DNA of 63,951 nt, the filler included, from Guillardia theta CCMP2712 (lineage: Eukaryota > Protista > Cryptophyta): the NCBI RefSeq assembly GCF_000315625.1. It is 5 parts of 4 records of this genome, joined end to end, with 100 filler letters (N's around TTAATTAATTAA, not from the genome) between each part and the next. Parts side by side here need not be neighbours in the genome. Positions count along the whole stretch, not along the records: positions 24,234 to 38,525 come from NW_005434315.1; 4 more parts are not named here. One strand, given 5' to 3'. The notes beneath the pieces are model-generated. The model did no database searches. It was not told where the DNA came from and saw nothing but the letters and a program-made list of their open reading frames with translations. The translations under genes were made by a program, and so were the position numbers. Position 1 is the stretch's first letter, and every line of letters starts with the position of its first letter. This document shows positions 24,242-37,507 of the stretch, one piece after another.

Positions 24242-26209
24242 TTGACTCACAAGCTAGAGGAATGCGTTCACTGTCCGAACTTATCTTCTTCAGCGGTTGG
24301 GTCCGGCAGGTTGGATGAGTGTGTGTGTGAGGCTGGATACCACCGTGTTGAAGGCAGCACACCCAGCGCACCGTTCACCTGTGAGATGTGCCCAGTGGAC
24401 AGCTACTGCTTTGGGGGGGTCCTCAAGGCATGCCCCACAAACTCCTTTGCTGGACAGTTCTCGTGGTCGATCTACGACTGCACTTGCGAGGCGGGATATT
24501 ACTGGGTGGAAGGGAATGGGACTGCAGGGGAGGGATCGAGGTGCGGGGGGTGCCCTGTGGGGAGCTACTGCAACAACAGTGTGATGCAATCGTGTCCATC
24601 GAATTCGCTGTCTGTAGAGCTGTCTTCTTCGATCTCGGCTTGCGTGTGCATTAATGGGTATTACCCGGCAAACGGGGATTACACTTGTACGCTATGCCCT
24701 GCGAACAGCTACTGCAAGGATGGTATGATTATGGGGTGCCCGGCGAACAACTTCTCCCTGGCGGGGTCGTCATTGCCAACGGATTGTGCGTCGTTGAACG
24801 CATGCCAGAAAAACACCTTCTCATACACTGGGGAGAAAATCAACCTGCTGTACTCATGCGGAGATGACGAGAGATCGTTGTGTTCGAGCACGTGCAGGAT
24901 TGGGTCGGCGATGACACCTGGTTTTGAACGAAAGGGAATATGGACAGGGCCAGGATCGTCAAGCACTGATGTTCGGGGTTCGTGTGAGCATGCATTAGAA
25001 GAGCCAACGACGACAGGCTTGGTGACGCAAGAGGTATCGATTGGGTGCTACGATTGCCGAACACCGCCATTCATAATCATAGACCTTGGGGTGAGTAGAG
25101 AGATTTCTAAAGTGAATATCTGGAGTATAGACAATGGGGCGTATTGGAATCTTGCGGGAGCAGGGGAACGAGTGTTGATTGGGGACAACCCAAGCGCGCC
25201 ACCAGACTCTTGCCCACAGAGCTGGGGGTGTGTGGGTTGTTGTAACAACAACAACGGACTATGTGCCTCTGGTATCAGGTGGTCAGGGCCTAACCAGAAG
25301 AATGAGATATCTTGCAACATGAAGGGAAGATATATAACGTTGACGACGGATTGCTTGCCATGCTCGGGTGGAAACCAGCATGGGCAATGGAAAGGGGTAC
25401 TGCAATCTGCTAAGGTAGAGCTCCCGTTTTGCTACGACTGTCCGGCGAATTCGGTATCGATCCCACAGTCTACGCGTTGCACGTGCCTTCCCGGATACAT
25501 AGACGCGTTGACTGGGTTGGGGTATACGGATAATACGAAGAGCGCATGCATCCCAGACACGGCGTGTTCAGACATGCCAAACGGGGTTTGGGATCTGTCA
25601 AGTAACCAGTGTATATTATGCCCGAGTGGGTACTACAAGAGTGGTCCACTGGAATGCGTGCCATGTCCCGCAGGATATGCGCTGAATTATTCTGGAGCGA
25701 TCTCACAGTCAGAGTGCACTTCGTGTACTCCGTCATATTTCAGCGACGAAGCGGGATCTTTGATTTGCAAGGAGTGTCCTGTTGATATGTATTCGAACAT
25801 GTCGGGGACATCATGCGCGTTGTGTCCCGATGGGTCATATCTGAAAAACCCATTGCAAGGGAGCGATCAATGTGCTGCGTGCGTTCCTGGTTACTTTTGT
25901 GTGAATGGGGTGATGAAACTGTGCGCAAACCACACATACTCAAACGCATCGTCGACAGCGTGTGAATATTGCCCTGAAGGATCATATTTGAAGAATCCAT
26001 TGCAAGGGAGTGAGCAGTGCTCTATATGCGAGGCAGGGAATTACTGTAGCCTAAGCCAGAAAAGTGCATGCTTTAAGAACTCAAACTCGACAGCTGGATC
26101 TTCTTTGAAAGAGCAATGTCGATGCAACTACGGATACTACCAGAGTGAGCCAGGCGTGTGCTCTGTATGCCCGAGGAACTCTCATTGCCCTGAAACGTGC
26201 TTTGGTTGA
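24242..26209 (+). CDS. Cys-rich repeat protein (GCC2/GCC3, ephrin-receptor-like repeats) with central galactose-binding-like domain; 5' truncated by gap
   Basis: Repeated CPxNSxSxxxSxxxxxCxCxxGYY units. Central FIIIDLGVSREISKVNIW...CNMKGRYITL resembles F5/8 type C / fucolectin domains. Confidence 0.8.
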   Translation: MTHKLEECVHCPNLSSSAVGSGRLDECVCEAGYHRVEGSTPSAPFTCEMCPVDSYCFGGVLKACPTNSFAGQFSWSIYDCTCEAGYYWVEGNGTAGEGSRCGGCPVGSYCNNSVMQSCPSNSLSVELSSSISACVCINGYYPANGDYTCTLCPANSYCKDGMIMGCPANNFSLAGSSLPTDCASLNACQKNTFSYTGEKINLLYSCGDDERSLCSSTCRIGSAMTPGFERKGIWTGPGSSSTDVRGSCEHALEEPTTTGLVTQEVSIGCYDCRTPPFIIIDLGVSREISKVNIWSIDNGAYWNLAGAGERVLIGDNPSAPPDSCPQSWGCVGCCNNNNGLCASGIRWSGPNQKNEISCNMKGRYITLTTDCLPCSGGNQHGQWKGVLQSAKVELPFCYDCPANSVSIPQSTRCTCLPGYIDALTGLGYTDNTKSACIPDTACSDMPNGVWDLSSNQCILCPSGYYKSGPLECVPCPAGYALNYSGAISQSECTSCTPSYFSDEAGSLICKECPVDMYSNMSGTSCALCPDGSYLKNPLQGSDQCAACVPGYFCVNGVMKLCANHTYSNASSTACEYCPEGSYLKNPLQGSEQCSICEAGNYCSLSQKSACFKNSNSTAGSSLKEQCRCNYGYYQSEPGVCSVCPRNSHCPETCFG

Positions 26210-26303: not shown

Positions 26304-26672
26304 ATGTTGGCGGCTGAGGATCTCTTGTGCTTGTCCGATGAGTTTCCACCCGATATTGAGGAGTTTGCCTCTGTGGATGCGATACAACGGAAGAGGAGGA
26401 AGATCAGCACTAACAGGAATACAGCATCAAAGTGCGAGCAGAGGTGTGGGGGATCGGAGTGCTTGTCCGATGAGTTTCCAGCCGACATTGAGGAGTTTGC
26501 CTCTGTGGATGCGATACAATGGAAGAGGAGGAAGATCAGCACTGACAGGAATACAGCATCAAAGTGCGAGCAGAGGCGGGGGGGATCGGAGTGCTTGTCC
26601 GATGAGTTTCCAACCGACATTGAGGAGTTTGCCTCTGTGGAGTTTGCCTCAGGGAATCCTTTTGTCGTATAA
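26304..26672 (+). CDS. Small ORF built from ~2.4 copies of a 132-bp (44 aa) repeat with KRRK NLS-like motif
   Basis: GTGCTTGTCCGATGAGTTTCCA recurs at 26327, 26459 and 26591. ATG at 26304. Confidence 0.45.
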   Translation: MLAAEDLLCLSDEFPPDIEEFASVDAIQRKRRKISTNRNTASKCEQRCGGSECLSDEFPADIEEFASVDAIQWKRRKISTDRNTASKCEQRRGGSECLSDEFPTDIEEFASVEFASGNPFVV

Positions 26673-26810
26673 AGGTTAAAAAGGTTTTCTATAAAGAATA
26701 TTGTTTGTATCGAGAGAATATTTCGGGCGGACTAAATTTTTATTTCTTTTTCATTTCCTCTTGAATGTAAAAACTTGACTGACAGTCAAGCATAGGACAG
26801 GAAGAGCAGC

Positions 26811-27554
26811 ATGAGCTCAGTGGTGTGTTATCACTGTGGGAGGTGGGGGCACATTGCCCCGGAGTGTTGGACGAATTCCCGTTATGCGGTCTCAGAATGG
26901 AGCGTCACCTCGAATAGAAGAACATGTTTTCAATGCGGAAAAACCGGACACTTTGCCAGCGAGTGCTATGCTAACAAGAGAAGGCGGACGGAGACTGTGG
27001 AGTGCTTCAATTGTGGGAAGCCTGGGCATTTCGCTTCAGAGTGCTTCTCACGAAAATGGGGCTCATACGAACAGCGTAATGATGAGATGGATGATGAAAA
27101 GGTCAAAAGTAGTGAGTCGAGTGAAGAAAGCGAGGATGAAGAGATAAACAAAAAGCCCATCGAGTATCCTCAACTCCTCCCCGGTACGAGCGGAGTATAC
27201 ATCTTGTTATATCCCAACGGACAGGTATACGTGGGCAGATCGAAGAACGTGGATAAACGCATTGGACAGCACTTGAAGGGACCATTCGCCGAATCATGGG
27301 GTAACCCAAAATTGATAGCCCCAGAAACCCCCGCGATACCGCATGATTTGGAGTCTTGGGAAAGGAATGAGACTTTGCACCAGATGAAGAAACACGGCAT
27401 CACAAAGGTGAGAGGGTGGAAGTATACTTCCGTTGCACTCAGCGCGGAAGAACATAGAGATGCCGCAATGCAGATACGCGAGAAATACGATCTGTGTCGT
27501 ATGTGTGGCAGCGGAACTCACTTCGCAGAGACATGTCGCTTGTCACGCGCCTGA
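26811..27554 (+). CDS. CCHC zinc-knuckle + GIY-YIG nuclease protein
   Basis: Three N-terminal CX2CX4HX4C knuckles, GVYILLYPNGQVYVGRSKNVDKRIGQH (GIY-YIG with catalytic Arg), WERNE, VRGWKY and a C-terminal knuckle CRMCGSGTHFAETC. Confidence 0.9.
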   Translation: MSSVVCYHCGRWGHIAPECWTNSRYAVSEWSVTSNRRTCFQCGKTGHFASECYANKRRRTETVECFNCGKPGHFASECFSRKWGSYEQRNDEMDDEKVKSSESSEESEDEEINKKPIEYPQLLPGTSGVYILLYPNGQVYVGRSKNVDKRIGQHLKGPFAESWGNPKLIAPETPAIPHDLESWERNETLHQMKKHGITKVRGWKYTSVALSAEEHRDAAMQIREKYDLCRMCGSGTHFAETCRLSRA

Positions 27555-27985: not shown

Positions 27986-28260
27986 TTTCACACCTTGACA
28001 CTTAGGCCCTTGCTTTAAGTAACGCAGTCCGCGGCCCCTAATGACACTTAGTACCCCACACAAAGCAGGTAAAATAAGGGGTAGTCAAAGTGGGGGAATA
28101 ACCAAGAGACAAACATAGAGGGGTGGTATGATACAATAAAACAACCCGTACTGTAATCAATGACACTTCGGCTAAGATCCTTGTACCCCCAATTAAAGCC
28201 TTAATTTAAGGGGTACTCACGTATTACATTTTGTGCTGAGAAACATAACACGTAACACAT

Positions 28261-28865
28261 ATGTACCCCCTATCTGCCCTATATATTCATGTATAACCAC
28301 CGGGTACACCCAGTCCACCTGTAATAGGACGACCACCCCATGTCAGTCAGGTTCATGTACCCCCAGTACCCCCTGCCTGCTCTATATATTCATGTATAAC
28401 CACCGGGTACTCCCACCCCACCTGTAATAGGACGACCACCCTATATAACCCCAAGTACCCCCTGTCTACCCCATATCTTTATATATAACCACCGGGTACA
28501 CCCAGTCCACCTGTAATAAGACGACCACCCCATATAACCCCAGTACCCCCAATCTCCCCCATATCTTTATATATAACCACCGGGTACACCCAGCCCACCT
28601 GTAATAAGACGACCACCCCATATAACCCCAGTACCCCCAATCTCCCCCATATCTTTATATATAACCACCGGGTACACCCACCCCACCTGTAATAGGACGA
28701 CCACCCCATATAACCCCAGTACCCCCAATCTCCCCCATATCTTTATATATAACCACCGGGTACACCCACCCCACCTGGAATGACCCACCACCCCATATAA
28801 CCCCCACCACCCCCATTTCCCCCATATCTTCATATATAACCACCGGGTACTCCCACTCCACTCCA
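28261..28865. repeat. ~88-bp minisatellite, about 7 units
   Basis: Core TATAACCACCGGGTAC recurs seven times; the central units have an exact 88-nt period. C-rich/G-poor top strand. One further unit at ~30400-30466. Confidence 0.9.
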
Positions 28866-28908
28866 CATATAATAAAGGGTGGGACCTAGGAAAATCTGAG
28901 AAGTCACA

Positions 28909-29526
28909 ATGCCCATCAAACGCAAGGCACGGCGCTCCTCCATTGGCATGTCAAAGAAACCCAAAGTATCTTTGGCTCTTGTGGTATATCGACCACCTCA
29001 AATACCTCGCGAATCTGATGCAGTTGTGATATACAAACCATTTGTGGATTTCGATTATGCTCGAAGTTGCATTTTTGCACATTGGACATGTAATTTGTTT
29101 TTCAGCCGTGGGAATGGAGTCGGTGGGCGAATATTGAGCCCCAAGTACAGCAACCGTGAGACTGTTCAATGGCGACTGTATGTAATCAGACTTTTTCACA
29201 TGCTTGACCGGTTTACTATCAGGAAGCTCGTTCCATTTTTGTTGCAATCTTCTATAGATTCCGATCATGATATGCTGTGTCGCAGCTTGTTGAATTTTTT
29301 TGGTGTCAAGATTGAGTCAAATGATCACTTTGATAACTTGAAGGTTGTCGAATATGAAGCCTGGATAAGAAGGATGTTCCAACATCAAGCATTCGACAAA
29401 GTGAAGCAGACAAAGCTTCAGTATGAATCTGAAATCGACAAGATGCAACAGAAACATGCTTTAGAACTAGAGAACAAAGACAGGCTGATTGCAGCCCTTC
29501 TCAAGAGGATTCCAAAGAAATTTTGA
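28909..29526 (+). CDS. Hypothetical protein, basic N-terminus and C-terminal coiled coil
   Basis: 205-aa ATG-initiated intronless ORF ending QQKHALELENKDRLIAALLKRIPKKF, 20 nt before the TTAA at 29547. Confidence 0.65.
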   Translation: MPIKRKARRSSIGMSKKPKVSLALVVYRPPQIPRESDAVVIYKPFVDFDYARSCIFAHWTCNLFFSRGNGVGGRILSPKYSNRETVQWRLYVIRLFHMLDRFTIRKLVPFLLQSSIDSDHDMLCRSLLNFFGVKIESNDHFDNLKVVEYEAWIRRMFQHQAFDKVKQTKLQYESEIDKMQQKHALELENKDRLIAALLKRIPKKF

Positions 29527-29550
29527 GTTATTCATTAAAGATACTTTTAA

Positions 29551-29687
29551 AATCTCGTAGTCACTGCATTGAATCAATGAACCGATGACACTGTTGTTCA
29601 TACATCTGCTTTCCACATTTCCTCTGATTTCCAAGAAGAGCGAACAATTGAATGTTTCTCTTGATGACCCCCAATAGTCAGTGACTA
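29551..29687 (-). ncRNA. Putative Fanzor omegaRNA scaffold (copy 1)
   Basis: Begins at the Fanzor-remnant stop codon and ends at TTAA (29547-29550). Has 9-bp perfect complementarity between 29679-29687 and 29558-29566, a hairpin CAATAGTC-AGT-GACTATTG (29672-29690) and a stem ATGAAC/GTTCAT. The terminal 93 nt including TTAA are duplicated exactly at 30092-30184. Confidence 0.6.
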
Positions 29688-29891
29688 TTGAGGGCGATGA
29701 TACAGAGGTCTTTGCAGAAATCCAGGTCTTCGAGGAAGTGACTTGAAACAAAGTAGAATATTCATGGCTGCATTGACGTCCCGGGATACAAATGGAGACT
29801 TGAAACATCTGGTGGAAGAACACCATTTCAATCCTCGAACACACGTTTTTCGCGTGTTGTGTATCCCTTTTCTTCGCATTAAGTGTCGCAT
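29685..29891 (-). pseudogene. Fanzor (eukaryotic TnpB homolog) C-terminal remnant
   Basis: VRGLKWCSSTRC...FVSRDVNAAMNILLCFKSLPRRPGFLQR gives the second Zn-finger Cys pair, the RuvC-III RDxNAAxNI motif and the RP tail. An in-frame stop lies just upstream; RuvC-I/II are absent. Confidence 0.85.
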
Positions 29892-30091
29892 AAAATCATG
29901 TTTTGGTTCGCTGACTCAGCTTTTGAGTTTGTCGCATTCATCACTTTTTATATTTTTTTTCAAGAAAATAAAAAAACCAAACCCAAGCAAATATTAACCA
30001 CTGGAGGTACAATACTCATCACGAGTTTAGGAGACGAATTTGTGATTTTGGAATTTGGGATTCCTTGTGGAATCCTTTTGACGTATAAAGG

Positions 30092-30333
30092 TTAAAATCT
30101 CGTAGTCACTGCATTGAATCAATGAACCGATGACACTGTTGTTCATACATCTGCTTTCCACATTTCCTCTGATTTCCAAGAAGACAACCTTTTGCAACGC
30201 CGCCAGCCGCAGAAAGCGCGAATGAGAGTCAACATGTATTACCACAAAGATGAACACCCATCTACTATCCACTAAGCTCTTCCGATGAAAACCACAGAAA
30301 CAGAGTCATGAGCCTCTCGCGGGCGGGAGTTAA
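30092..30333 (-). mobile_element. Non-autonomous 234-bp TTAA-flanked element with Fanzor right end / partial omegaRNA (copy 2)
   Basis: TTAA at 30092-30095 and 30330-30333. 30092-30184 is identical to 29547-29639. Both flanks match sequences elsewhere in the island up to the TTAA. Confidence 0.7.
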
Positions 30334-30466
30334 AGCCTTAATTTAAGGGGTACTCACGTATTACATTTTGTGCTGGGAAACATAACACGTAACACATATG
30401 TACCCCCTATCTGCACTATATATTCATGTATAACCACCGGGTACTCCCACTCCACCTGTAATAGGA
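30330..30466 (+). repeat. 137-bp direct repeat of 28193-28329 starting at TTAA
   Basis: TTAAAGCCTTAATTTAAGGGGTACTCACG...CCACCTGTAATAGGA, 4 mismatches by manual comparison. Confidence 0.9.
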
Positions 30467-30536
30467 GGTTCATGAATTTGAGTCAATTTCGAATTGCTTC
30501 TATATCGGGCTTGAAGCGCTTGCGAGAATCAAAGGA

Positions 30537-30821
30537 ATGATGCAGTCCTCCACACAGAACCTCACCCTCGGCGCGGCGTACCCAAACCCGCTCACCTATG
30601 GTGACATCGACCATTATCTCAGTGCTGTCGAGTATGACACCGAGGTCTCCCCAGAGGAGTTGCATCAGCAGATCACAAAAGCCGCGCTGAGATTCGTCCG
30701 GTCTAGGAACATCCCCGTGGACTCCAAGATCTACACGAAGGCAATCACATTCATGAATTCCAACTTCTGTCACATCAAGGGGGTCGAGAACTATCTTGCA
30801 AAGTTGCTTGTTACGAAGTAG
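30537..30821 (+). CDS. Small hypothetical protein
   Basis: 94-aa ATG-initiated ORF with ordinary globular composition, convergent with the GNAT. Confidence 0.55.
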   Translation: MMQSSTQNLTLGAAYPNPLTYGDIDHYLSAVEYDTEVSPEELHQQITKAALRFVRSRNIPVDSKIYTKAITFMNSNFCHIKGVENYLAKLLVTK

Positions 30822-31472: not shown

Positions 31473-31874
31473 TTACTTAGCCATCAAAGGAAAAATTTCT
31501 TTTATTTGCTCCAGAAGTTGATTTTTCTTCTCATTGTTAGGCTCGAATTCCAATAATGCAAGTTCAAGCAATAGTTTTATAGCTACGGAATTCCGCTGTA
31601 ATATTTGCTTATTCTTTCTCAATCTCGCATTTATCTGGTCTGAATCTGCATACTTGTAACCTGCCAAAGCGCCAATTACTGGATAAGACATTGGTGCGTA
31701 TGTAGAAATCATGTTTTTTTTATTTTCCGCTGATGTTGCATACATCAATGAACCAAGAGCTGTGCCTGCACTTATTGGAATTGCATAGTTTTTGATATTT
31801 TGCATGTATTTGTTTATATCTTGCATGTATTTGTTTATATCTTGTATATATTTGTTACACTTCGTTCTTGACAT
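31473..31874 (-). CDS. Small AT-rich putative membrane protein (paralog 1)
   Basis: Two hydrophobic Gly-containing segments. 31647-31810 is near-identical to 32046-32209. Confidence 0.6.
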   Translation of the reverse strand: MSRTKCNKYIQDINKYMQDINKYMQNIKNYAIPISAGTALGSLMYATSAENKKNMISTYAPMSYPVIGALAGYKYADSDQINARLRKNKQILQRNSVAIKLLLELALLEFEPNNEKKNQLLEQIKEIFPLMAK

Positions 31875-31889
31875 GTTGAAGGATTTTTC

Positions 31890-32204
31890 TTATTCTGAAT
31901 TTTTCATTTCATCATTATCAGGGTCTTTCAATGCATATTCCAACAGTATTTGTATAGCTAGTGAATTGCTGTCTAATTGTGCATCCAAACGATCCTCTAG
32001 GATCTTAAAATTCACATCATGTAATCTCTGTTCTATCATATCATTTGCATACTTGTAACCTGCCAAAGCGCCAATTACTGGATAAGACATTGGTGCGTAT
32101 GTAGAAATCATGTTTTTTTTATTTCCCGCTGATGTTGCATACATCAATGAACCAAGAGCTGTGCCTGCACTTATTGGAATTGCATAGTTTTTGATATTTT
32201 GCAT
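31890..32204 (-). CDS. Small AT-rich putative membrane protein (paralog 2)
   Basis: Shares MQNIKNYAIPISAGTALGSLMYATSA...GALAGYKYA with the adjacent ORF; the C-terminus has diverged. Confidence 0.6.
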   Translation of the reverse strand: MQNIKNYAIPISAGTALGSLMYATSAGNKKNMISTYAPMSYPVIGALAGYKYANDMIEQRLHDVNFKILEDRLDAQLDSNSLAIQILLEYALKDPDNDEMKNSE

Positions 32205-32256
32205 GTATTGTTTTGTGATATCAAACTAATGGACTTATTTATATAGTTTGTTTGAA

Positions 32257-34809
32257 ATGAGGTATAAATTAAATCTTGCTAAAGAATTGGTGCTTATGGG
32301 GAAGGGGCAGTGTTTCAAACAGGGACTTGTTGTCTGCACCCTCACTGTTCGAATATTCATTCTTTCAGTGCTTCTTTGTTTCAAAAACGTCAATTGTTCT
32401 GGCATATCGTTCGCTCCTATATGTTCACACATCACATGCCCTGCCAACCAGTACCTTATCAATTGCGGTCCTGATAGCGAAGGACAGTGTATGGACTGCA
32501 CTTCATGCTTGCAGAATGAATATCAAACGAGAGCATGCCAGGAAGGTGATGTCCAGGTTGATAGGCAGTGTGAGGTCTGCACTTCATGCCTGCAGGATGA
32601 ATACCAAACAAGAGCATGCCAGGAAGGTGGTGTACAGTTCAATAGGAAGTGTAGAAGTTTTTTCTCCAACTGCTCCGGTTATTATCTCATTCACCGTGGC
32701 CCTGGGACGCATACAGAGTACAATGTTACTTTTAAGGAGGCGGCTTTGGTAGATGTGCTCATTGTTGCGGGTGGTGGCGGGGGAGGTTCGAGCGGGGCTG
32801 GCGGTGGAGGCGGCGGAGGTGTGATACATGCTCAGAGTGTCCCTGTCCCTGCCGGGACGCACCATGCTTCTACAGGGAACGGGGGGAATGGTGCATGTGC
32901 AAGAAATACTGGACAGTGTGGTCCTGTGTATGGTTCCAATGGACAGCCTTCATCAATATTCGGGGCGACTGCTTATGGAGGAGGTGGGGGTTGTGGACGA
33001 TATAATGGATGCGCAGCTGGTTATTCATGTCCATATTGTTCTCAGGGATTAAACGGTGGATCCGGTGGTGGTATGGGTACAGCTGCATGGATGGTTGATA
33101 CTAATACTTATCCGGGGGGCAGAGCGGATTGGGGGTCGGTTGCAGCGTCTTCAATCGTCTGGAATGGGCAATTGCTCAAGGGATATGCAAACGATGGAGG
33201 ATCTGGTGTGAGTGTAAATTTTTACTATGATAATGACGCCGGTGAACTTGTAAATGACCGTGTTTCCGGGGCCGGGGGGGGGGGTGCGGGGGGTCAAGGC
33301 ATAGATGGCTCTGTGAATCTCTCCAAGGGGATTCCGCATGGGGGCGATGGGATTCAGATTAACATCGACGGGAACAACTACTTCTGGGCTGGTGGTGGTG
33401 GCGGTTCCCAATATATAGCCTATATAGGGGGTAATGGTGGTAAAGGTGGGGGTGGGGGTGGCGCGAGAACAGGTTGTTATTATAGATACTGGGGAGATGT
33501 GGGAGATTATGAATCATTCCATTGTGAGGACAGGGAGTATGGCTGGTCCAGTGGGGGCACTGGTGGCATTTCGAATGGGGAAAGTGGTGAGGGTACAAAT
33601 AGCGTACTGTTGGGCGCTAGAGGTGGGTCAGGAGGGTCATCTACGGGGGGGGGAGGTGGCGGGGGTGCTACTGAAAAAGGCAGTGGGGGCTCCGGCGGCT
33701 CTGGGATGATTGCGATCAGGATCGTCTCTGGAGGCGGCGGTAATTTGGTGCCATTTTCAGGCGACCCTGACGGTTTCTGCTCTCTCTGCGCCCCCGGGGA
33801 AGCTGTGGTTAATTGCATCTGTATGCATAATCACTACAAAGCCACTACAGGTTCTTTGTACATGTGTGAGCCGTGTCCTGCCCATTCATCCGTGCTCAGC
33901 ATATACCCAGCTTTTAAGAGGAGAGACTGCATTTGTGATACAGGGGACTTCTATTACAATGGCACGGATGACGACTTTGAATGTCTGACATGTCCTGTCA
34001 ACTCAAGTATACCGGGTGGGGGTCCAGGGACATCCCGAGCTGACTGTGTCTGTATGAGTAATAACTACAGGGACGGCGGCGTTGATGATTTCGTTTGTAC
34101 CCGCTGTCCTGAGAACTCTTTCTTGTTGACGAGCGACCAAGCGATGTCTCGAAAAGATTGCGTCTGCCAGTCCAATTACTACAAGGATGGTGCGGATGAT
34201 GATTTCGTTTGTACCCGCTGTCCTGAGAACTCTTCCGTGTGGATCAGCGGCCAAGCGATGTCTCGTCTAGATTGCGTCTGCCAGTCCAATTACTACAAGG
34301 ACGGTGCGGATGACAGTTTCATTTGTGCTCCTTGCCCAGTTAATTCCAATGCGTTGTATGGAGGTACATCACGTTTGGATTGCTTGTGCAATTCGGGGTA
34401 CTATCGATCAGGGTCGGATGTGGCCTTTCAATGTCAAGCCTGCACAAACTGCACGGTGGGCCAGTACCAGGTCATAGCGTGTCAAGGTGGCAGCGACACA
34501 ACCCAGAACCGTGTATGCTCCACATGCAGCGGGGGATGCTCCGCGGGGACTCATGAGATACAAGCTTGCGCAGACGGCAACAATGCAGCACAACGCGCCT
34601 GTGAGCCGTGCCCGGCGCAGACGTACTCGTTGACGGACTGGAAGTATTGTTCATCATGTCCGAATAATTCGTTTATTTTAGATGATGCACCTGGCACCTC
34701 TGCATATTCATGCTGGTGTGGGCAAGGTTTCGGCCTGATTGAAGCTGAGAAACTCATGGTAATGATCTTTGTGGAGTTGATGATGTTTGCTTTACTGCTG
34801 TTGACCTGA
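32257..34809 (+). CDS. Surface protein: signal anchor, TNFR-like Cys repeats, glycine-rich domain, GCC2/GCC3-like repeats, hydrophobic C-terminus
   Basis: VDVLIVAGGGGGG...GGGGGGVI, YFWAGGGGG and GGSGGSGMIAIR are typical of the Gly-rich domain of phage/giant-virus fibre proteins and ALK/LTK. 38-aa Cys repeats with a 114-bp period at 34084/34198. Confidence 0.8.
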   Translation: MRYKLNLAKELVLMGKGQCFKQGLVVCTLTVRIFILSVLLCFKNVNCSGISFAPICSHITCPANQYLINCGPDSEGQCMDCTSCLQNEYQTRACQEGDVQVDRQCEVCTSCLQDEYQTRACQEGGVQFNRKCRSFFSNCSGYYLIHRGPGTHTEYNVTFKEAALVDVLIVAGGGGGGSSGAGGGGGGGVIHAQSVPVPAGTHHASTGNGGNGACARNTGQCGPVYGSNGQPSSIFGATAYGGGGGCGRYNGCAAGYSCPYCSQGLNGGSGGGMGTAAWMVDTNTYPGGRADWGSVAASSIVWNGQLLKGYANDGGSGVSVNFYYDNDAGELVNDRVSGAGGGGAGGQGIDGSVNLSKGIPHGGDGIQINIDGNNYFWAGGGGGSQYIAYIGGNGGKGGGGGGARTGCYYRYWGDVGDYESFHCEDREYGWSSGGTGGISNGESGEGTNSVLLGARGGSGGSSTGGGGGGGATEKGSGGSGGSGMIAIRIVSGGGGNLVPFSGDPDGFCSLCAPGEAVVNCICMHNHYKATTGSLYMCEPCPAHSSVLSIYPAFKRRDCICDTGDFYYNGTDDDFECLTCPVNSSIPGGGPGTSRADCVCMSNNYRDGGVDDFVCTRCPENSFLLTSDQAMSRKDCVCQSNYYKDGADDDFVCTRCPENSSVWISGQAMSRLDCVCQSNYYKDGADDSFICAPCPVNSNALYGGTSRLDCLCNSGYYRSGSDVAFQCQACTNCTVGQYQVIACQGGSDTTQNRVCSTCSGGCSAGTHEIQACADGNNAAQRACEPCPAQTYSLTDWKYCSSCPNNSFILDDAPGTSAYSCWCGQGFGLIEAEKLMVMIFVELMMFALLLLT

Positions 34810-36136: not shown

Positions 36137-36810
36137 TTATGTCACTTCTTTCAATGCATCCTCCAACTCCAATATCTGAATGATTTTGATGATTTTTACG
36201 ATGATTTCCACCGTTCCGCAACCATGAAACTCGAACAAAACCGACTCACCAATCCCGAGGTCGTTCACAGCGTGATAATAGCTGAACTTCCGTGTATCAT
36301 ACTCTTTTTTGGTCATCACGTGGCAATACACCCCCCCTTCGTGCGAGCAGAGAACGGCGTCGTAGTTCTTGAACGCAGGCCTGAACAAACCCAAGATGTG
36401 TGAGTTGTTGTACTCTGCTTCGGAGTTGATCTCGGCATTGAAATTCAGCCGCAAATGATCCCTCTGGTCGTGTTCGCCGTCGTCTTCAATTGACACCGAA
36501 AACAGCCCAAGCTTTTTCCTCACTAGATACTCCAGTTGTGTTTCATATTTCGATGACAAATTCTCGATGCATCTCTTTCGCTCTGCGTCCAATACAGGCT
36601 GCATGCTTTGGCTTTCTGGGGGTGGCGCGTGGTGTACATTCATGTACTTTCGTTTTTTTTCTTTACGGAAGAACTCGAAGCAGACGCCTGGGTTGAGGTG
36701 AATGAGGCAGATGGAGAGGACGACTTTGACGTTCCAGGGCTGGTCTTGTTTTTGCTGGTGCTGCTGGTGCTGCTGCTGTTGTTGTTGTTGCTGCTGTTGT
36801 TGCTGCTGCT

Positions 36811-36844
<34 letters not shown>

Positions 36845-37507
36845 CTGTTGTTGCTGCTGCTGTTGTTGTTGTTGCTGCTGCTGCTGCTGCTTCTGCTGTT
36901 TCAGGAGCCGCCTCTGCTGTTTTTTGGTTTTGTGCTTGTGTTCGTGCTTTGGTTGCTGCTTTGGTTCCTGCTTTGGTTGCTGCTTTGGTTCGTGCTTTGG
37001 TTCGTGCTTTGGTTCGTGCTTTGGTTCCTGGTTTGGGGTTGGGAGCTGCTGCTGCGTGGGGGCTTGAGTCTTGGAGCGCTTTGTTTGCCTGGGAGGGTAG
37101 TGGGAGTCGCAGTTGATCTCAGCGGCCTTGATGACGTAGCGGAGCATGACGAAGAACTTCTTTGAGCAGTCCAAGAGGGGCTTCTGGTAGATTTTTGTGA
37201 GGGCCTGGTCTTCGGAGAGGGCAGAGAATTCGTGGTCCATGATTCCGAAGGCCTTGAACTTTCGGGAGTTTGCGATGAGGCCCTTGTCTGTGGATTTGAA
37301 TTGTTTTGGGGTGAGAATTGTTTTTGGGAGATGGAAGAGGGGTTGACCTTGGACGACGACGCGGAAGAATCGCTTGAGGATCCTGGAGGCGGCGGCGGGG
37401 AGGAGGAGTGAGGGTTTGGGGGGGAGGGTGCACCTGGACCTGCGAGGGGTGAGAGGGGATTTTGGGGACTTTATGGTGTGGGGCACCTGTGGAGGCTGTA
37501 GCAGCAT
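36137..37507 (-). CDS. Hypothetical protein with poly-Q tract and EPKH repeats
   Basis: 456-aa ORF with a mixed CAG/CAA poly-Q. Its start overlaps the end of the lipase-like gene. Confidence 0.6.

What the first reader, a model, noticed from the sequence alone, without database searches (positions are those of the whole stretch)
29547..29997. Internally deleted Fanzor element retaining the RuvC-III tail and a structured omegaRNA end
The minus-strand 68-codon ORF has the TnpB/Fanzor C-terminal signature (C-x4-C...RDVNAAMNI...RP). The ~137 nt from its stop codon to TTAA can fold. TAGTCACTG at the stop codon pairs perfectly with CAGTGACTA 7 nt from the end, like the 5'-3' pairing/pseudoknot of TnpB omegaRNAs, in competition with a local hairpin at 29672-29690. 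A TTAA at 29994-29997 is a candidate left boundary (~450 bp element). Established: TnpB/Fanzor omegaRNAs derive from the element's right end and take the flank as guide. From memory, the characterised G. theta Fanzor1 uses a TTAA-type TAM; this needs verifying.
Basis: partly seen in the sequence, partly recalled or inferred. Interest (0 to 1): 0.8.

Follow-up and report, generated by a model that had tools for sequence, protein, structure and literature searches.

The report
Dead Fanzor gene remnant, ends redrawn
This is the broken tail end of a Fanzor (eukaryotic RNA-guided nuclease) gene carried on a small 456-bp mobile-element remnant. This makes it an ordinary decayed copy of a known kind, with redrawn borders.

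Summary
The minus-strand 68-codon ORF (29685-29891) is a genuine Fanzor1-type C-terminus. It matches the last ~50 residues of ~600-aa Fanzor-like proteins, best a Hanusia phi transcript at E 8e-15. Nothing else of the protein survives, so it is a dead, internally deleted copy.

The borders and the RNA claim do not hold as stated:
- **Left border.** It is 30091/30092, next to TTAA(AA), not the TTAA at 29994.
- **The "93-nt end".** 29547-29639 is one copy of an exact 93-bp direct repeat. The other copy, 30092-30184, has no Fanzor sequence upstream.
- **Structure.** The 93-nt piece folds no better than shuffles (z +1.0). The structured part is the 65 nt around and after the stop codon (29636-29700, z -6.0).
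- **Right border.** Contigs from independent sequencing runs join position 29636 to other sequences. Giant-virus relatives also end 35-51 nt after their stop codons.

The element is therefore 29636-30091 (456 bp). It is a "ghost-like" non-autonomous Fanzor derivative present in at least two variants.

The 93-bp duplication may be a long target duplication, as reported for Chlamydomonas Fanzor1 elements, or an assembly chimera of two alleles. No transcript evidence was found. Interest is modest.

The parts
29636..30091 (-). Fanzor-remnant element proper (456 bp): left end, about 200 nt of non-coding sequence, C-terminal gene fragment, structured right end
   Evidence: Left border: a variant contig ends exactly at 30091. 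LE+TTAAAA is seen in three different contexts: the window itself, 26653-26681, and a contig joint 30097->30330. Right border: position 29636 is joined to flank+TTAA in run X1 and to an unrelated sequence in run X5. The terminal hairpin ends at 29636.
29685..29891 (-). 68-codon ORF: second half of the TNB zinc finger, the RuvC-III motif (SRDVNAAMNI) and the C-terminal tail of a Fanzor1-type protein
   Evidence: phmmer gives E 8e-15 to P0001, residues 550-598 of 598. tblastn gives 76% identity over 46 aa. The profile match covers positions 520-581 of 593 at 74.5 bits.
29667..29695 (-). Perfect 13-bp hairpin with a 3-nt loop, spanning the TAG stop codon
   Evidence: Giant-virus relatives have an analogous hairpin across the stop codon.
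29636..29662 (-). Terminal hairpin (5+4 bp) whose 3' arm ends at the right border
   Evidence: the 65 nt 29636-29700 fold at -24.8 kcal/mol, z -5.96, and 0 of 200 shuffles fold as well.
30058..30075 (-). Left-end subterminal hairpin (GGATTCC-ACAA-GGAATCC), 16 nt from the left border
   Evidence: z -3.72, and 0 of 200 shuffles fold as well.
29547..29639 (.). 93-bp repeat, copy B. It starts with TTAAAA on the + strand and overlaps the element's first 4 nt (AAGA, 29636-29639).
   Evidence: Searches show 100% identity to 30092-30184. No fold signal. The junction to the element was not recovered in any indexed run (only 2 sampled words).
30092..30184 (.). 93-bp repeat, copy A. It lies directly after the element's left end and has no Fanzor sequence on its other side.
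   Evidence: The contig 30092-30359 is continuous into 30185+ in X1 and X5.
30185..30329 (.). 145-bp spacer between repeat copy A and the TTAA-initiated 137-bp repeat. Together with copy A it is absent from an alternative junction (30097->30330).
   Evidence: the joint that skips 232 nt (depth 5.6 in X1, 277 in X5).
26653..26681 (-). Second occurrence of TTTTAA plus the first 23 nt of the left end (28 of 29 identical). On the + strand it doubles as the last codons, stop codon and 3' flank of a 122-aa repeat ORF.
   Evidence: The same locus appears as a loose end in X1 and X5.

Best explanation
A decayed, internally deleted copy of a Fanzor1-type mobile element lies on the minus strand at 29636-30091 (456 bp).

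**What it keeps**
- About 200 nt of left end with a subterminal hairpin.
- The last ~60 codons of the nuclease gene: half of the zinc finger, the RuvC-III motif and the tail.
- A 65-nt right end made of two hairpins, one of which spans the stop codon.

**What it can and cannot do**
- It cannot encode a nuclease, because the WED, REC, RuvC-I and RuvC-II regions are gone.
- It is best seen as a 'ghost-like' non-autonomous derivative. At most it could be moved, or supply a guide-RNA scaffold, with proteins made elsewhere. This is inferred, not shown.

**Where it sits**
- Its left end sits immediately 3' of TTAA (TTTTAA) in every context seen.
- Relative to an 'empty' form found in independent reads, it is flanked by TTAA on both sides.

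**The 93-bp piece**
It is neighbouring sequence that appears on both sides of the element in this assembly.
- That could be a real long target duplication or microhomology-mediated duplication. It could also be a consensus chimera of a filled and an empty allele joined at the shared AAGA.
For: **Protein identity**
- Searches give E 8e-15 and 76% identity to the C-terminus of the 598-aa protein P0001.
- P0001 scores 30.3 bits on Pfam Cas12f1-like_TNB, above the cut-off.
- P0001 hits SpuFz1 (8gkh) at E 1e-5 over residues 40-541.
- P0001 comes from a Hanusia phi transcriptome.

**Only the tail is left**
- The profile matches positions 520-581 of 593 and no other frame.
- tblastn with all 70 hits: every one of the 60 best alignments lies within 29643-29948; weaker ones were not printed.

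**Borders,**
- A variant contig covers 29897-30091 and ends at 30091.
- There is a joint 29550->29636 in X1.
- X5 has a different sequence directly before 29636.
- A joint 29546->30092 in X1 gives a form lacking the 545 bp.
- A joint 30097->30330 occurs in X1 and X5.

**Structure,**
- 29636-29700 folds at z -5.96.
- The left-end hairpin folds at z -3.72.
- The 93-nt piece folds at z +1.01.

**Comparative evidence**
- Three copies in one giant-virus MAG (L011, L015, L016) lose similarity 35-51 nt after the stop codon.
- They carry a hairpin across the stop codon.
- This matches a right end 49 nt after the stop codon here.

**At least two variants share the same deletion**
- The variants of 29688-29835 and of 29897-30091 both appear in X1 and/or X5.
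Against: - The alternative junctions come from de Bruijn contigs of other runs, possibly other strains. Many pieces were not shown and 'a hole proves nothing'.
- The window-specific junction between repeat copy B and the element was tested with only 2 sampled words.
- TTAA is not seen after the right end in the X5 copy, so a TTAA target duplication is shown at one locus only.
- No intact gene of this lineage was found in the same genome. The best relative is 76% identical over the tail and comes from another cryptophyte.
- No RNA evidence exists either way. The poly-A-type run X11 had almost no reads here.
- The 9-nt complement between the stop-codon hairpin and the 93-nt piece is mildly unusual (4% of shuffles) and is unexplained by my reading.
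Confidence: 0.7

Rival explanations
1. The element is the whole 545-bp unit 29547-30091, and its right end or omegaRNA scaffold includes the 93 nt ending in TTAA. It inserted right after the TTAA at the end of a neighbouring ORF-less 'ghost' copy (30092-30329) that shares the same 93-nt right end.
For: - Both 93-nt copies end in TTAA on the minus strand, and the element's left end follows one of them directly.
- A form lacking exactly 545 bp exists in X1. It would be the empty site, carrying TTAA plus a guide-matching flank.
- Ghost loci sharing the omegaRNA region are known in S. punctatus (PMC10432273).
- GtFz1's omegaRNA reaches about 100 nt past its stop codon.
- The 9-nt complement to the stop-codon hairpin is reached by only 4% of shuffles.
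Against: - The 93 nt have no fold signal (z +1.01).
- The Fanzor tail is joined at 29636 to two other sequences in independent runs.
- Relatives end 35-51 nt after the stop codon.
- The 93-nt pattern is absent from the viral and metagenome collections.
- 100% identity of the two copies, against roughly 5-10% divergence between the variant pieces of the element seen, argues for a local duplication rather than two separate family members.
Confidence: 0.12
2. The 93-bp direct repeat is a genuine long target-site duplication. It would have been made when a truncated or deleted Fanzor1 element inserted by a rolling-circle, 'one-ended' type of event, as described for the Chlamydomonas CRe-1/2/3 (Helitron2) elements.
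For: - Bao & Jurka 2013 (PMC3627910) report that 5'-truncated or internally deleted Fanzor1 CRe copies are flanked by variable TSDs. These include TSDs of 44, 50, 93, 242 and 443 bp.
- The same paper reports insertion downstream of TTTT.
- Here the left end is preceded by TTTT(AA) in three contexts.
- Hairpins sit at both ends.
- The empty form with a single 93-nt copy exists.
Against: - No asymmetric terminal inverted repeat of 6 nt or more was found between the two ends.
- No RepHel gene is seen in the piece.
- The junction between repeat copy B and the element was not recovered in other runs.
- A form with only TTAA on both sides also exists (the joint that skips 85 nt).
Confidence: 0.25
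3. The second 93-nt copy (29551-29635) is an assembly artefact. The sequenced material would hold an empty allele (flank-93nt-spacer) and a filled allele (flank-TTAA-element-TTAA-93nt-spacer). The consensus would then have followed the empty allele for 85 nt and switched to the filled allele at the shared AAGA.
For: - Both simple forms are present as contigs in X1 (joints skipping 545 and 85).
- The repeat and the element overlap by exactly the 4 nt AAGA.
- Contig depth inside 29564-29620 is 0 in X1 and 11.9 in X5, against about 266 nearby.
- No indexed run holds the junction words.
- The two copies are 100% identical.
Against: - A 4-nt overlap is not enough for an overlap assembler to join reads by itself.
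- Depth holes and a 2-word test are weak evidence.
- I could not look at the reads behind the assembly.
Confidence: 0.3

Closest known systems
Partial and 'ghost' Fanzor1 loci of Spizellomyces punctatus (Saito et al. 2023, PMC10432273)
   Same: They are short (~550 nt) derivatives that keep both element ends and the 3' RNA-coding region but lack a working Fz ORF. They are multi-copy, and a conserved motif (the TAM) lies just 5' of the left end.
   Different: The Spu elements have 30-nt inverted repeats, and their ghost omegaRNAs were shown to be expressed and active. Here no inverted repeats were found and no RNA was detected. Only two or three copies could be inferred, and the protein lineage is different.
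GtFz1 of Guillardia theta (Saito 2023; Xu et al. 2024, PMC11423790)
   Same: It is a Fanzor1-class protein from a cryptophyte with a 5'-TTAA(N) TAM. Its omegaRNA overlaps the last 17 codons.
   Different: It is a different lineage. The GtFz1 C-terminus reads NRNVAGAFNI, with a non-canonical N, and sits next to a Tc1/mariner-like ORF. The remnant has the canonical SRDVNAAMNI and clusters with a Hanusia phi transcript and giant-virus proteins.
Fanzor1-like genes in giant-virus MAGs (IMG/VR GVMAG contigs L006-L016)
   Same: They share 29-34% identity with the Hanusia relative over the full length. They are compact elements with a hairpin across the stop codon and a right end 35-100 nt downstream.
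   Different: They are intact genes. One group (L006, L007, L008) has ~40-nt inverted repeats. The L011 group shows no TTAA at its left border.
CRe-1/2/3 Fanzor1 elements of Chlamydomonas (Helitron2; Bao & Jurka 2013, PMC3627910)
   Same: They are often 5'-truncated or internally deleted Fanzor1 copies with intact 3' ends. They have hairpins at both ends, insert after a T-rich tetranucleotide, and occasionally carry very long flanking duplications, including one of 93 bp.
   Different: The defining asymmetric terminal inverted repeats were not found here, and no link to a RepHel gene was seen.

Membership tests
TnpB/Fanzor nuclease (protein) | Significant sequence similarity to family members | tested here: met
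   E 8e-15 to P0001. The profile of 52 relatives scores 74.5 bits. P0001 itself passes Pfam PF07282 and hits SpuFz1. The peptime alone is below the Pfam cut-off, at 13.3 bits against 26.3.
TnpB/Fanzor nuclease (protein) | RuvC-III motif RDxNAAxNI | tested here: met
   SRDVNAAMNI lies at codons 36-45 of the ORF. It aligns with the invariant D573 and N575 of alignment A1.
TnpB/Fanzor nuclease (protein) | Complete C4 zinc finger, plus RuvC-I Asp and RuvC-II Glu (a functional enzyme) | tested here: not met
   Only the second Cys pair (C-x4-C) is present. Profile positions 1-519 have no match in any frame of 29500-30200. Among the alignments printed (60 best of the tblastn search with the 70 hits), nothing outside 29643-29948 matches in the 14-kb piece.
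omegaRNA/reRNA-encoding right end | Stable structure overlapping the ORF end and ending at the element border | tested here: met
   This holds for 29636-29700 only, at z -5.96. The border at 29636 comes from the junctions. It does not hold for the 93-nt piece (z +1.01).
omegaRNA/reRNA-encoding right end | Structure conserved with covariation across copies or relatives | tested here: inconclusive
   The other variant is identical across the hairpin region, because the bubble starts at 29688. Relatives have an analogous stop-codon hairpin but are not alignable. There is no Rfam match.
omegaRNA/reRNA-encoding right end | Expressed small RNA that extends into the flank as a guide | not testable with these tools
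   The only raw RNA run (X11, a cDNA library with 6% read) gave almost no reads. 13 runs of the same species label, most of them only guessed to be RNA, hold next to none of the words. No small-RNA library was available.
Ghost / non-autonomous Fanzor element | Same deleted structure present in more than one copy, with shared ends | tested here: met
   A variant contig spans the left end and the start of the gene fragment (29897-30091; 6 substitutions and 5 gapped bases). A variant of 29688-29835 has 9 substitutions. The right end lies in at least two flanks.
Helitron2 (CRe-like) | Asymmetric terminal inverted repeats (5' end paired to a site 20-30 bp from the 3' end) | tested here: not met
   No complement of 6 nt or more was found between the first 45 nt and the last 90 nt.
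piggyBac-like or other TTAA-duplicating DDE transposons | Terminal inverted repeats | tested here: not met
   The ends are CCTTTATACG... and ...GTTCGCTCTT, with no inverted repeat. No transposase ORF was found in the piece.
IS200/IS605-style architecture | Fixed tetranucleotide 5' of the left end, subterminal hairpins, no inverted repeats | tested here: met
   TTAA (TTTTAA) lies 5' of the left end in 3 contexts. Hairpins are present at both ends. Whether insertion is duplication-free is inconclusive. No Y1 transposase was seen.

The most novel reading that the evidence does not exclude
The 456-bp remnant may be a still-mobile 'ghost' element. It is present or absent at this very site in different read sets, always with TTAA 5' of its left end. 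Its two-hairpin right end would serve as an omegaRNA scaffold for a Fanzor of the Hanusia/giant-virus lineage encoded elsewhere, in the genome or in an infecting giant virus. That would give a natural eukaryotic case of trans-acting, TTAA-dependent Fanzor homing.
Probability: 0.1. Interest if true: 0.7.

Novelty: new member of a known kind. Interest (0 to 1): 0.3.

Why it matters
Partial and ORF-less Fanzor loci are already documented, so the remnant itself adds little.

Three things have some value:
- **A second lineage.** This cryptophyte-type genome once hosted a second Fanzor1 lineage. It is canonical D-E-D and related to a Hanusia transcript and to giant-virus genes. It is distinct from the characterised GtFz1, yet also sits next to TTAA.
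- **Polymorphism.** The locus appears polymorphic between read sets (filled and empty forms). This is the raw material needed to study how such elements move in eukaryotes, where no transposase partner is known.
- **A caution.** The exact 93-bp repeat may be a consensus artefact. That is a warning against reading element ends from a single assembly.

Tried and rejected
- **PDB search with the 68-aa peptide.** No hit even at E<=10.
- **Pfam on the peptide.** Only a sub-threshold TNB match.
- **Rfam on 28100-30600.** Nothing.
- **Exact protein look-ups.** None on record for the 68-aa ORF, P0001 or the 247-aa neighbour.
- **93-nt pattern scans.** Zero in viral contigs and in metagenome contigs.
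- **Hairpin and left-end pattern scans.** Zero in viral contigs.
- **The search for related loci with the peptide in metagenomes.** 598 pattern hits, none confirmed.
- **The search for related loci with P0001 in viral contigs.** None.
- **Search for a close intact relative.** The word search with P0001 found no relative above 39% identity, so the test 'is the 93 nt downstream of intact ORFs in this genome' could not be run.
- **Saito et al. supplements.** No match to the 93-nt, left-end or tail DNA strings. Both listed G. theta loci are GtFz1-type.
- **Synonymous-change pattern between the two tail variants.** 5 of 9 changes are synonymous. I rejected this as evidence of selection, because the number is too small and both variants seem to share the deletion.
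- **Helitron2 and piggyBac membership.** Rejected for lack of ATIR or TIR.

Full report
**What is in the sequence.**

On the minus strand, a 68-codon ORF (29891->29685) reads MRHLMRRKGIHNTRKTCVRGLKWCSSTRCFKSPFVSRDVNAAMNILLCFKSLPRRPGFLQRPLYHRPQ*.

29547-29639 is repeated with 100% identity at 30092-30184, 545 bp away. Both copies begin with TTAAAA on the + strand.

**Is the peptide Fanzor?** Yes.

- The peptide alone is below Pfam's threshold (Cas12f1-like_TNB 13.3 bits against 26.3) and has no PDB hit.
- An exhaustive phmmer search of 1.84 billion representatives gave 70 hits at E<=1e-3. Most are 550-700-aa proteins matched at their extreme C-terminus.
- The best hit is P0001 (598 aa), matched at residues 550-598 with E 8e-15.
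- P0001 is a Hanusia phi (cryptophyte) transcript from EukProt.
- P0001 passes Pfam PF07282 (30.3 bits). It aligns over residues 40-541 with the solved Spizellomyces Fanzor1 (8gkh, E 1e-5).
- An alignment of 16 relatives has the invariant RuvC Asp, Glu and Asp residues.

**How much is left?**

- A profile of 52 full-length relatives matches the minus frame only at profile positions 520-581 of 593 (74.5 bits). No other frame of 29500-30200 matches.
- tblastn with all 70 hits: every one of the 60 best alignments lies within 29643-29948; weaker ones were not printed.
- So only the second Cys pair of the zinc finger, the RuvC-III motif and the tail survive. This is a dead fragment.

**Which lineage?**

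GtFz1 uses 5'-TTAAN (PMC10432273; PMC11423790).
- However, GtFz1's C-terminus is ...WWNRNVAGAFNILTRL.... The two G. theta loci in that paper are both of that type.
- The remnant belongs to another lineage. Its nearest full-length relatives, apart from Hanusia, are metagenomic. They sit in gene-dense contigs that look like giant viruses and in giant-virus MAGs of IMG/VR (29-34% identity over the full length).
- No relative closer than 39% to P0001 was found by the word search. I therefore could not find an intact copy from the window's own genome.

**Borders.**

I laid contigs and reads of four public runs on 28880-30560. Organism names are coded. X1 and X5 carry the same species label.

Left border:
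- A diverged copy (6 substitutions, 5 gapped bases) covers 29897-30091 and stops exactly at 30091.
- The last 23 nt of the left end plus TTAAAA recur at 26653-26681.
- They also recur in a contig that joins 30097 directly to 30330.
- So the left border is 30091/30092, always preceded on the minus strand by TTTTAA.

Right border:
- In X1 a contig joins flank+TTAA (29550) directly to 29636.
- In X5 the sequence before 29636 is unrelated (...CATACCCACC), at full single-copy depth.
- In X1 another contig runs from the flank through one 93-nt copy into 30185+. This is a form lacking the 545 bp.
- The mobile unit is therefore 29636-30091 (456 bp). Compared with the empty form it is flanked by TTAA on both sides.
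- The 93-nt copy B overlaps the unit by just the 4 nt AAGA (29636-29639).

**Structure.**

| Stretch | Result |
|---|---|
| 93 nt alone | z +1.01; 167 of 200 shuffles fold as well |
| 29636-29700 | -24.8 kcal/mol, z -5.96; 0 of 200 shuffles |
| Left-end 7-bp hairpin, 30058-30075 | z -3.72 |

- The 29636-29700 stretch holds a perfect 13-bp hairpin across the stop codon (29667-29695). It also holds a terminal hairpin whose last base is 29636, the border found independently from the junctions.
- The 9-nt long-range complement is reached in 208 of 5000 shuffles. That is suggestive at best.
- Rfam has nothing.

**Comparative support.**

- In one giant-virus MAG, three copies of a related element (L011, L015, L016; about 92-95% identical to one another) lose similarity 35-51 nt after the stop codon.
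- Their last 70 nt form a hairpin across the stop codon (z -3.3 and -5.7).
- They also have a perfect palindrome near the left end and no terminal inverted repeats.
- This architecture matches a right end 49 nt after the stop codon here. It does not match one 138 nt after.
- Those viral copies have no TTAA at their left border. Another viral group (L006, L007, L008) has ~40-nt inverted repeats. Ends therefore vary within the clade.

**What the 93-bp repeat is.**

I cannot settle this. There are three readings.

1. The lack of structure, the alternative junctions and the comparative data argue against it.
2. It is a real long flanking duplication.
   - Bao & Jurka (PMC3627910) describe exactly such variable duplications, including 93 bp, around truncated Fanzor1 CRe elements. 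Those elements insert after TTTT.
   - Here TTTT precedes the left end too.
   - However, the defining Helitron2 asymmetric inverted repeats are absent.
3. It is a consensus chimera of the empty and filled alleles, switched at the shared AAGA.
   - Both simple forms are present in X1.
   - Depth inside copy B is 0 in X1 and 11.9 in X5, against about 266 nearby.
   - No indexed run holds the junction words (only 2 sampled words, so this is weak).

**Expression.**

- Thirteen runs of the same species label (X11 on record as RNA, the others only guessed to be RNA) hold next to none of the stretch's words.
- The one raw RNA run laid gave a handful of reads, from a third variant of the left-end region.
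- No small-RNA data were available. There is no evidence for an omegaRNA, and this is not a fair test against one.

**Mechanism.**

Shown:
- It is a gene fragment that cannot make a nuclease.
- It has discrete ends with hairpins.
- TTAA lies 5' of the left end.
- At least two variants exist.
- Filled and empty forms exist.

Inferred:
- It is a non-autonomous, ghost-like derivative.
- Its 3' hairpins are what remains of the RNA scaffold or right-end recognition structure.
- It moved, or was copied, with proteins supplied in trans.
- The carrier transposon class is unknown. There are no TIRs, no ATIRs and no transposase in the piece.

**Verdict.**

It is a new member of a known kind. Interest is modest.

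Noticed in passing
window 28193-28861 and 30330-30466: A 137-bp repeat starting with TTAAAG occurs twice (97% identical). The first copy leads into an 88-bp tandem array of about 6-7 units. Contig depth reaches about 16 times single copy in X5. A lake-water metagenome run (X6) holds near-identical pieces (1-2 differences).
   Followed up: partly
window 26304-26672 (+): A 122-aa ORF is made of 44-aa (132-nt) tandem repeats. Its last codons, stop codon and TTAAAA coincide with the reverse complement of the Fanzor remnant's left end (28 of 29 nt). This may be a solo left-end fragment or a shared insertion-site motif.
   Followed up: partly
window 26811-27554 (+): A 247-aa ORF combines three CCHC zinc knuckles with a GIY-YIG nuclease domain (Pfam E 5e-16 and 6.5e-7). 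This is an unusual pairing next to the mobile-element remnants.
   Followed up: no
window 29733-29879, run X6: A lake-water metagenome holds a 147-nt piece of the Fanzor tail with 6 differences (96% identity). Close relatives of this element therefore exist in freshwater samples.
   Followed up: no
window 29718-29805: A second variant of the gene fragment in X1 and X5 differs at 9 sites. Five are synonymous, including all four in the zinc-finger/RuvC-III core. One change (G57E) moves it toward the Hanusia sequence. The depth ratio is about 70:30 in both runs.
   Followed up: partly
L006/L009 1396-1435 and 3304-3343; L011/L015/L016: The giant-virus MAG relatives fall into two architectures. One is flanked by ~40-nt inverted repeats containing TTTAAAA, with a conserved AGACGGAGGG...TATCCGTTAT stem after the stop codon. 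The other has no inverted repeats, a 14-bp palindrome near the left end, and three copies in one MAG.
   Followed up: partly
window 31644-31815 and 32043-32214: A 172-nt duplication (98% identical) underlies two paralogous minus-strand ORFs (31473-31874 and 31890-32204). A 21-nt tandem repeat sits at the 5' end of one.
   Followed up: no
window 24242-26209 and 32248-34809 (+): These are long intron-free ORFs. They encode cysteine-rich ephrin-receptor-like and TNFR-like repeat proteins, one with a glycine-rich domain. ORF 36137-37507 carries a long CAG/CAA (poly-Q) tract.
   Followed up: no
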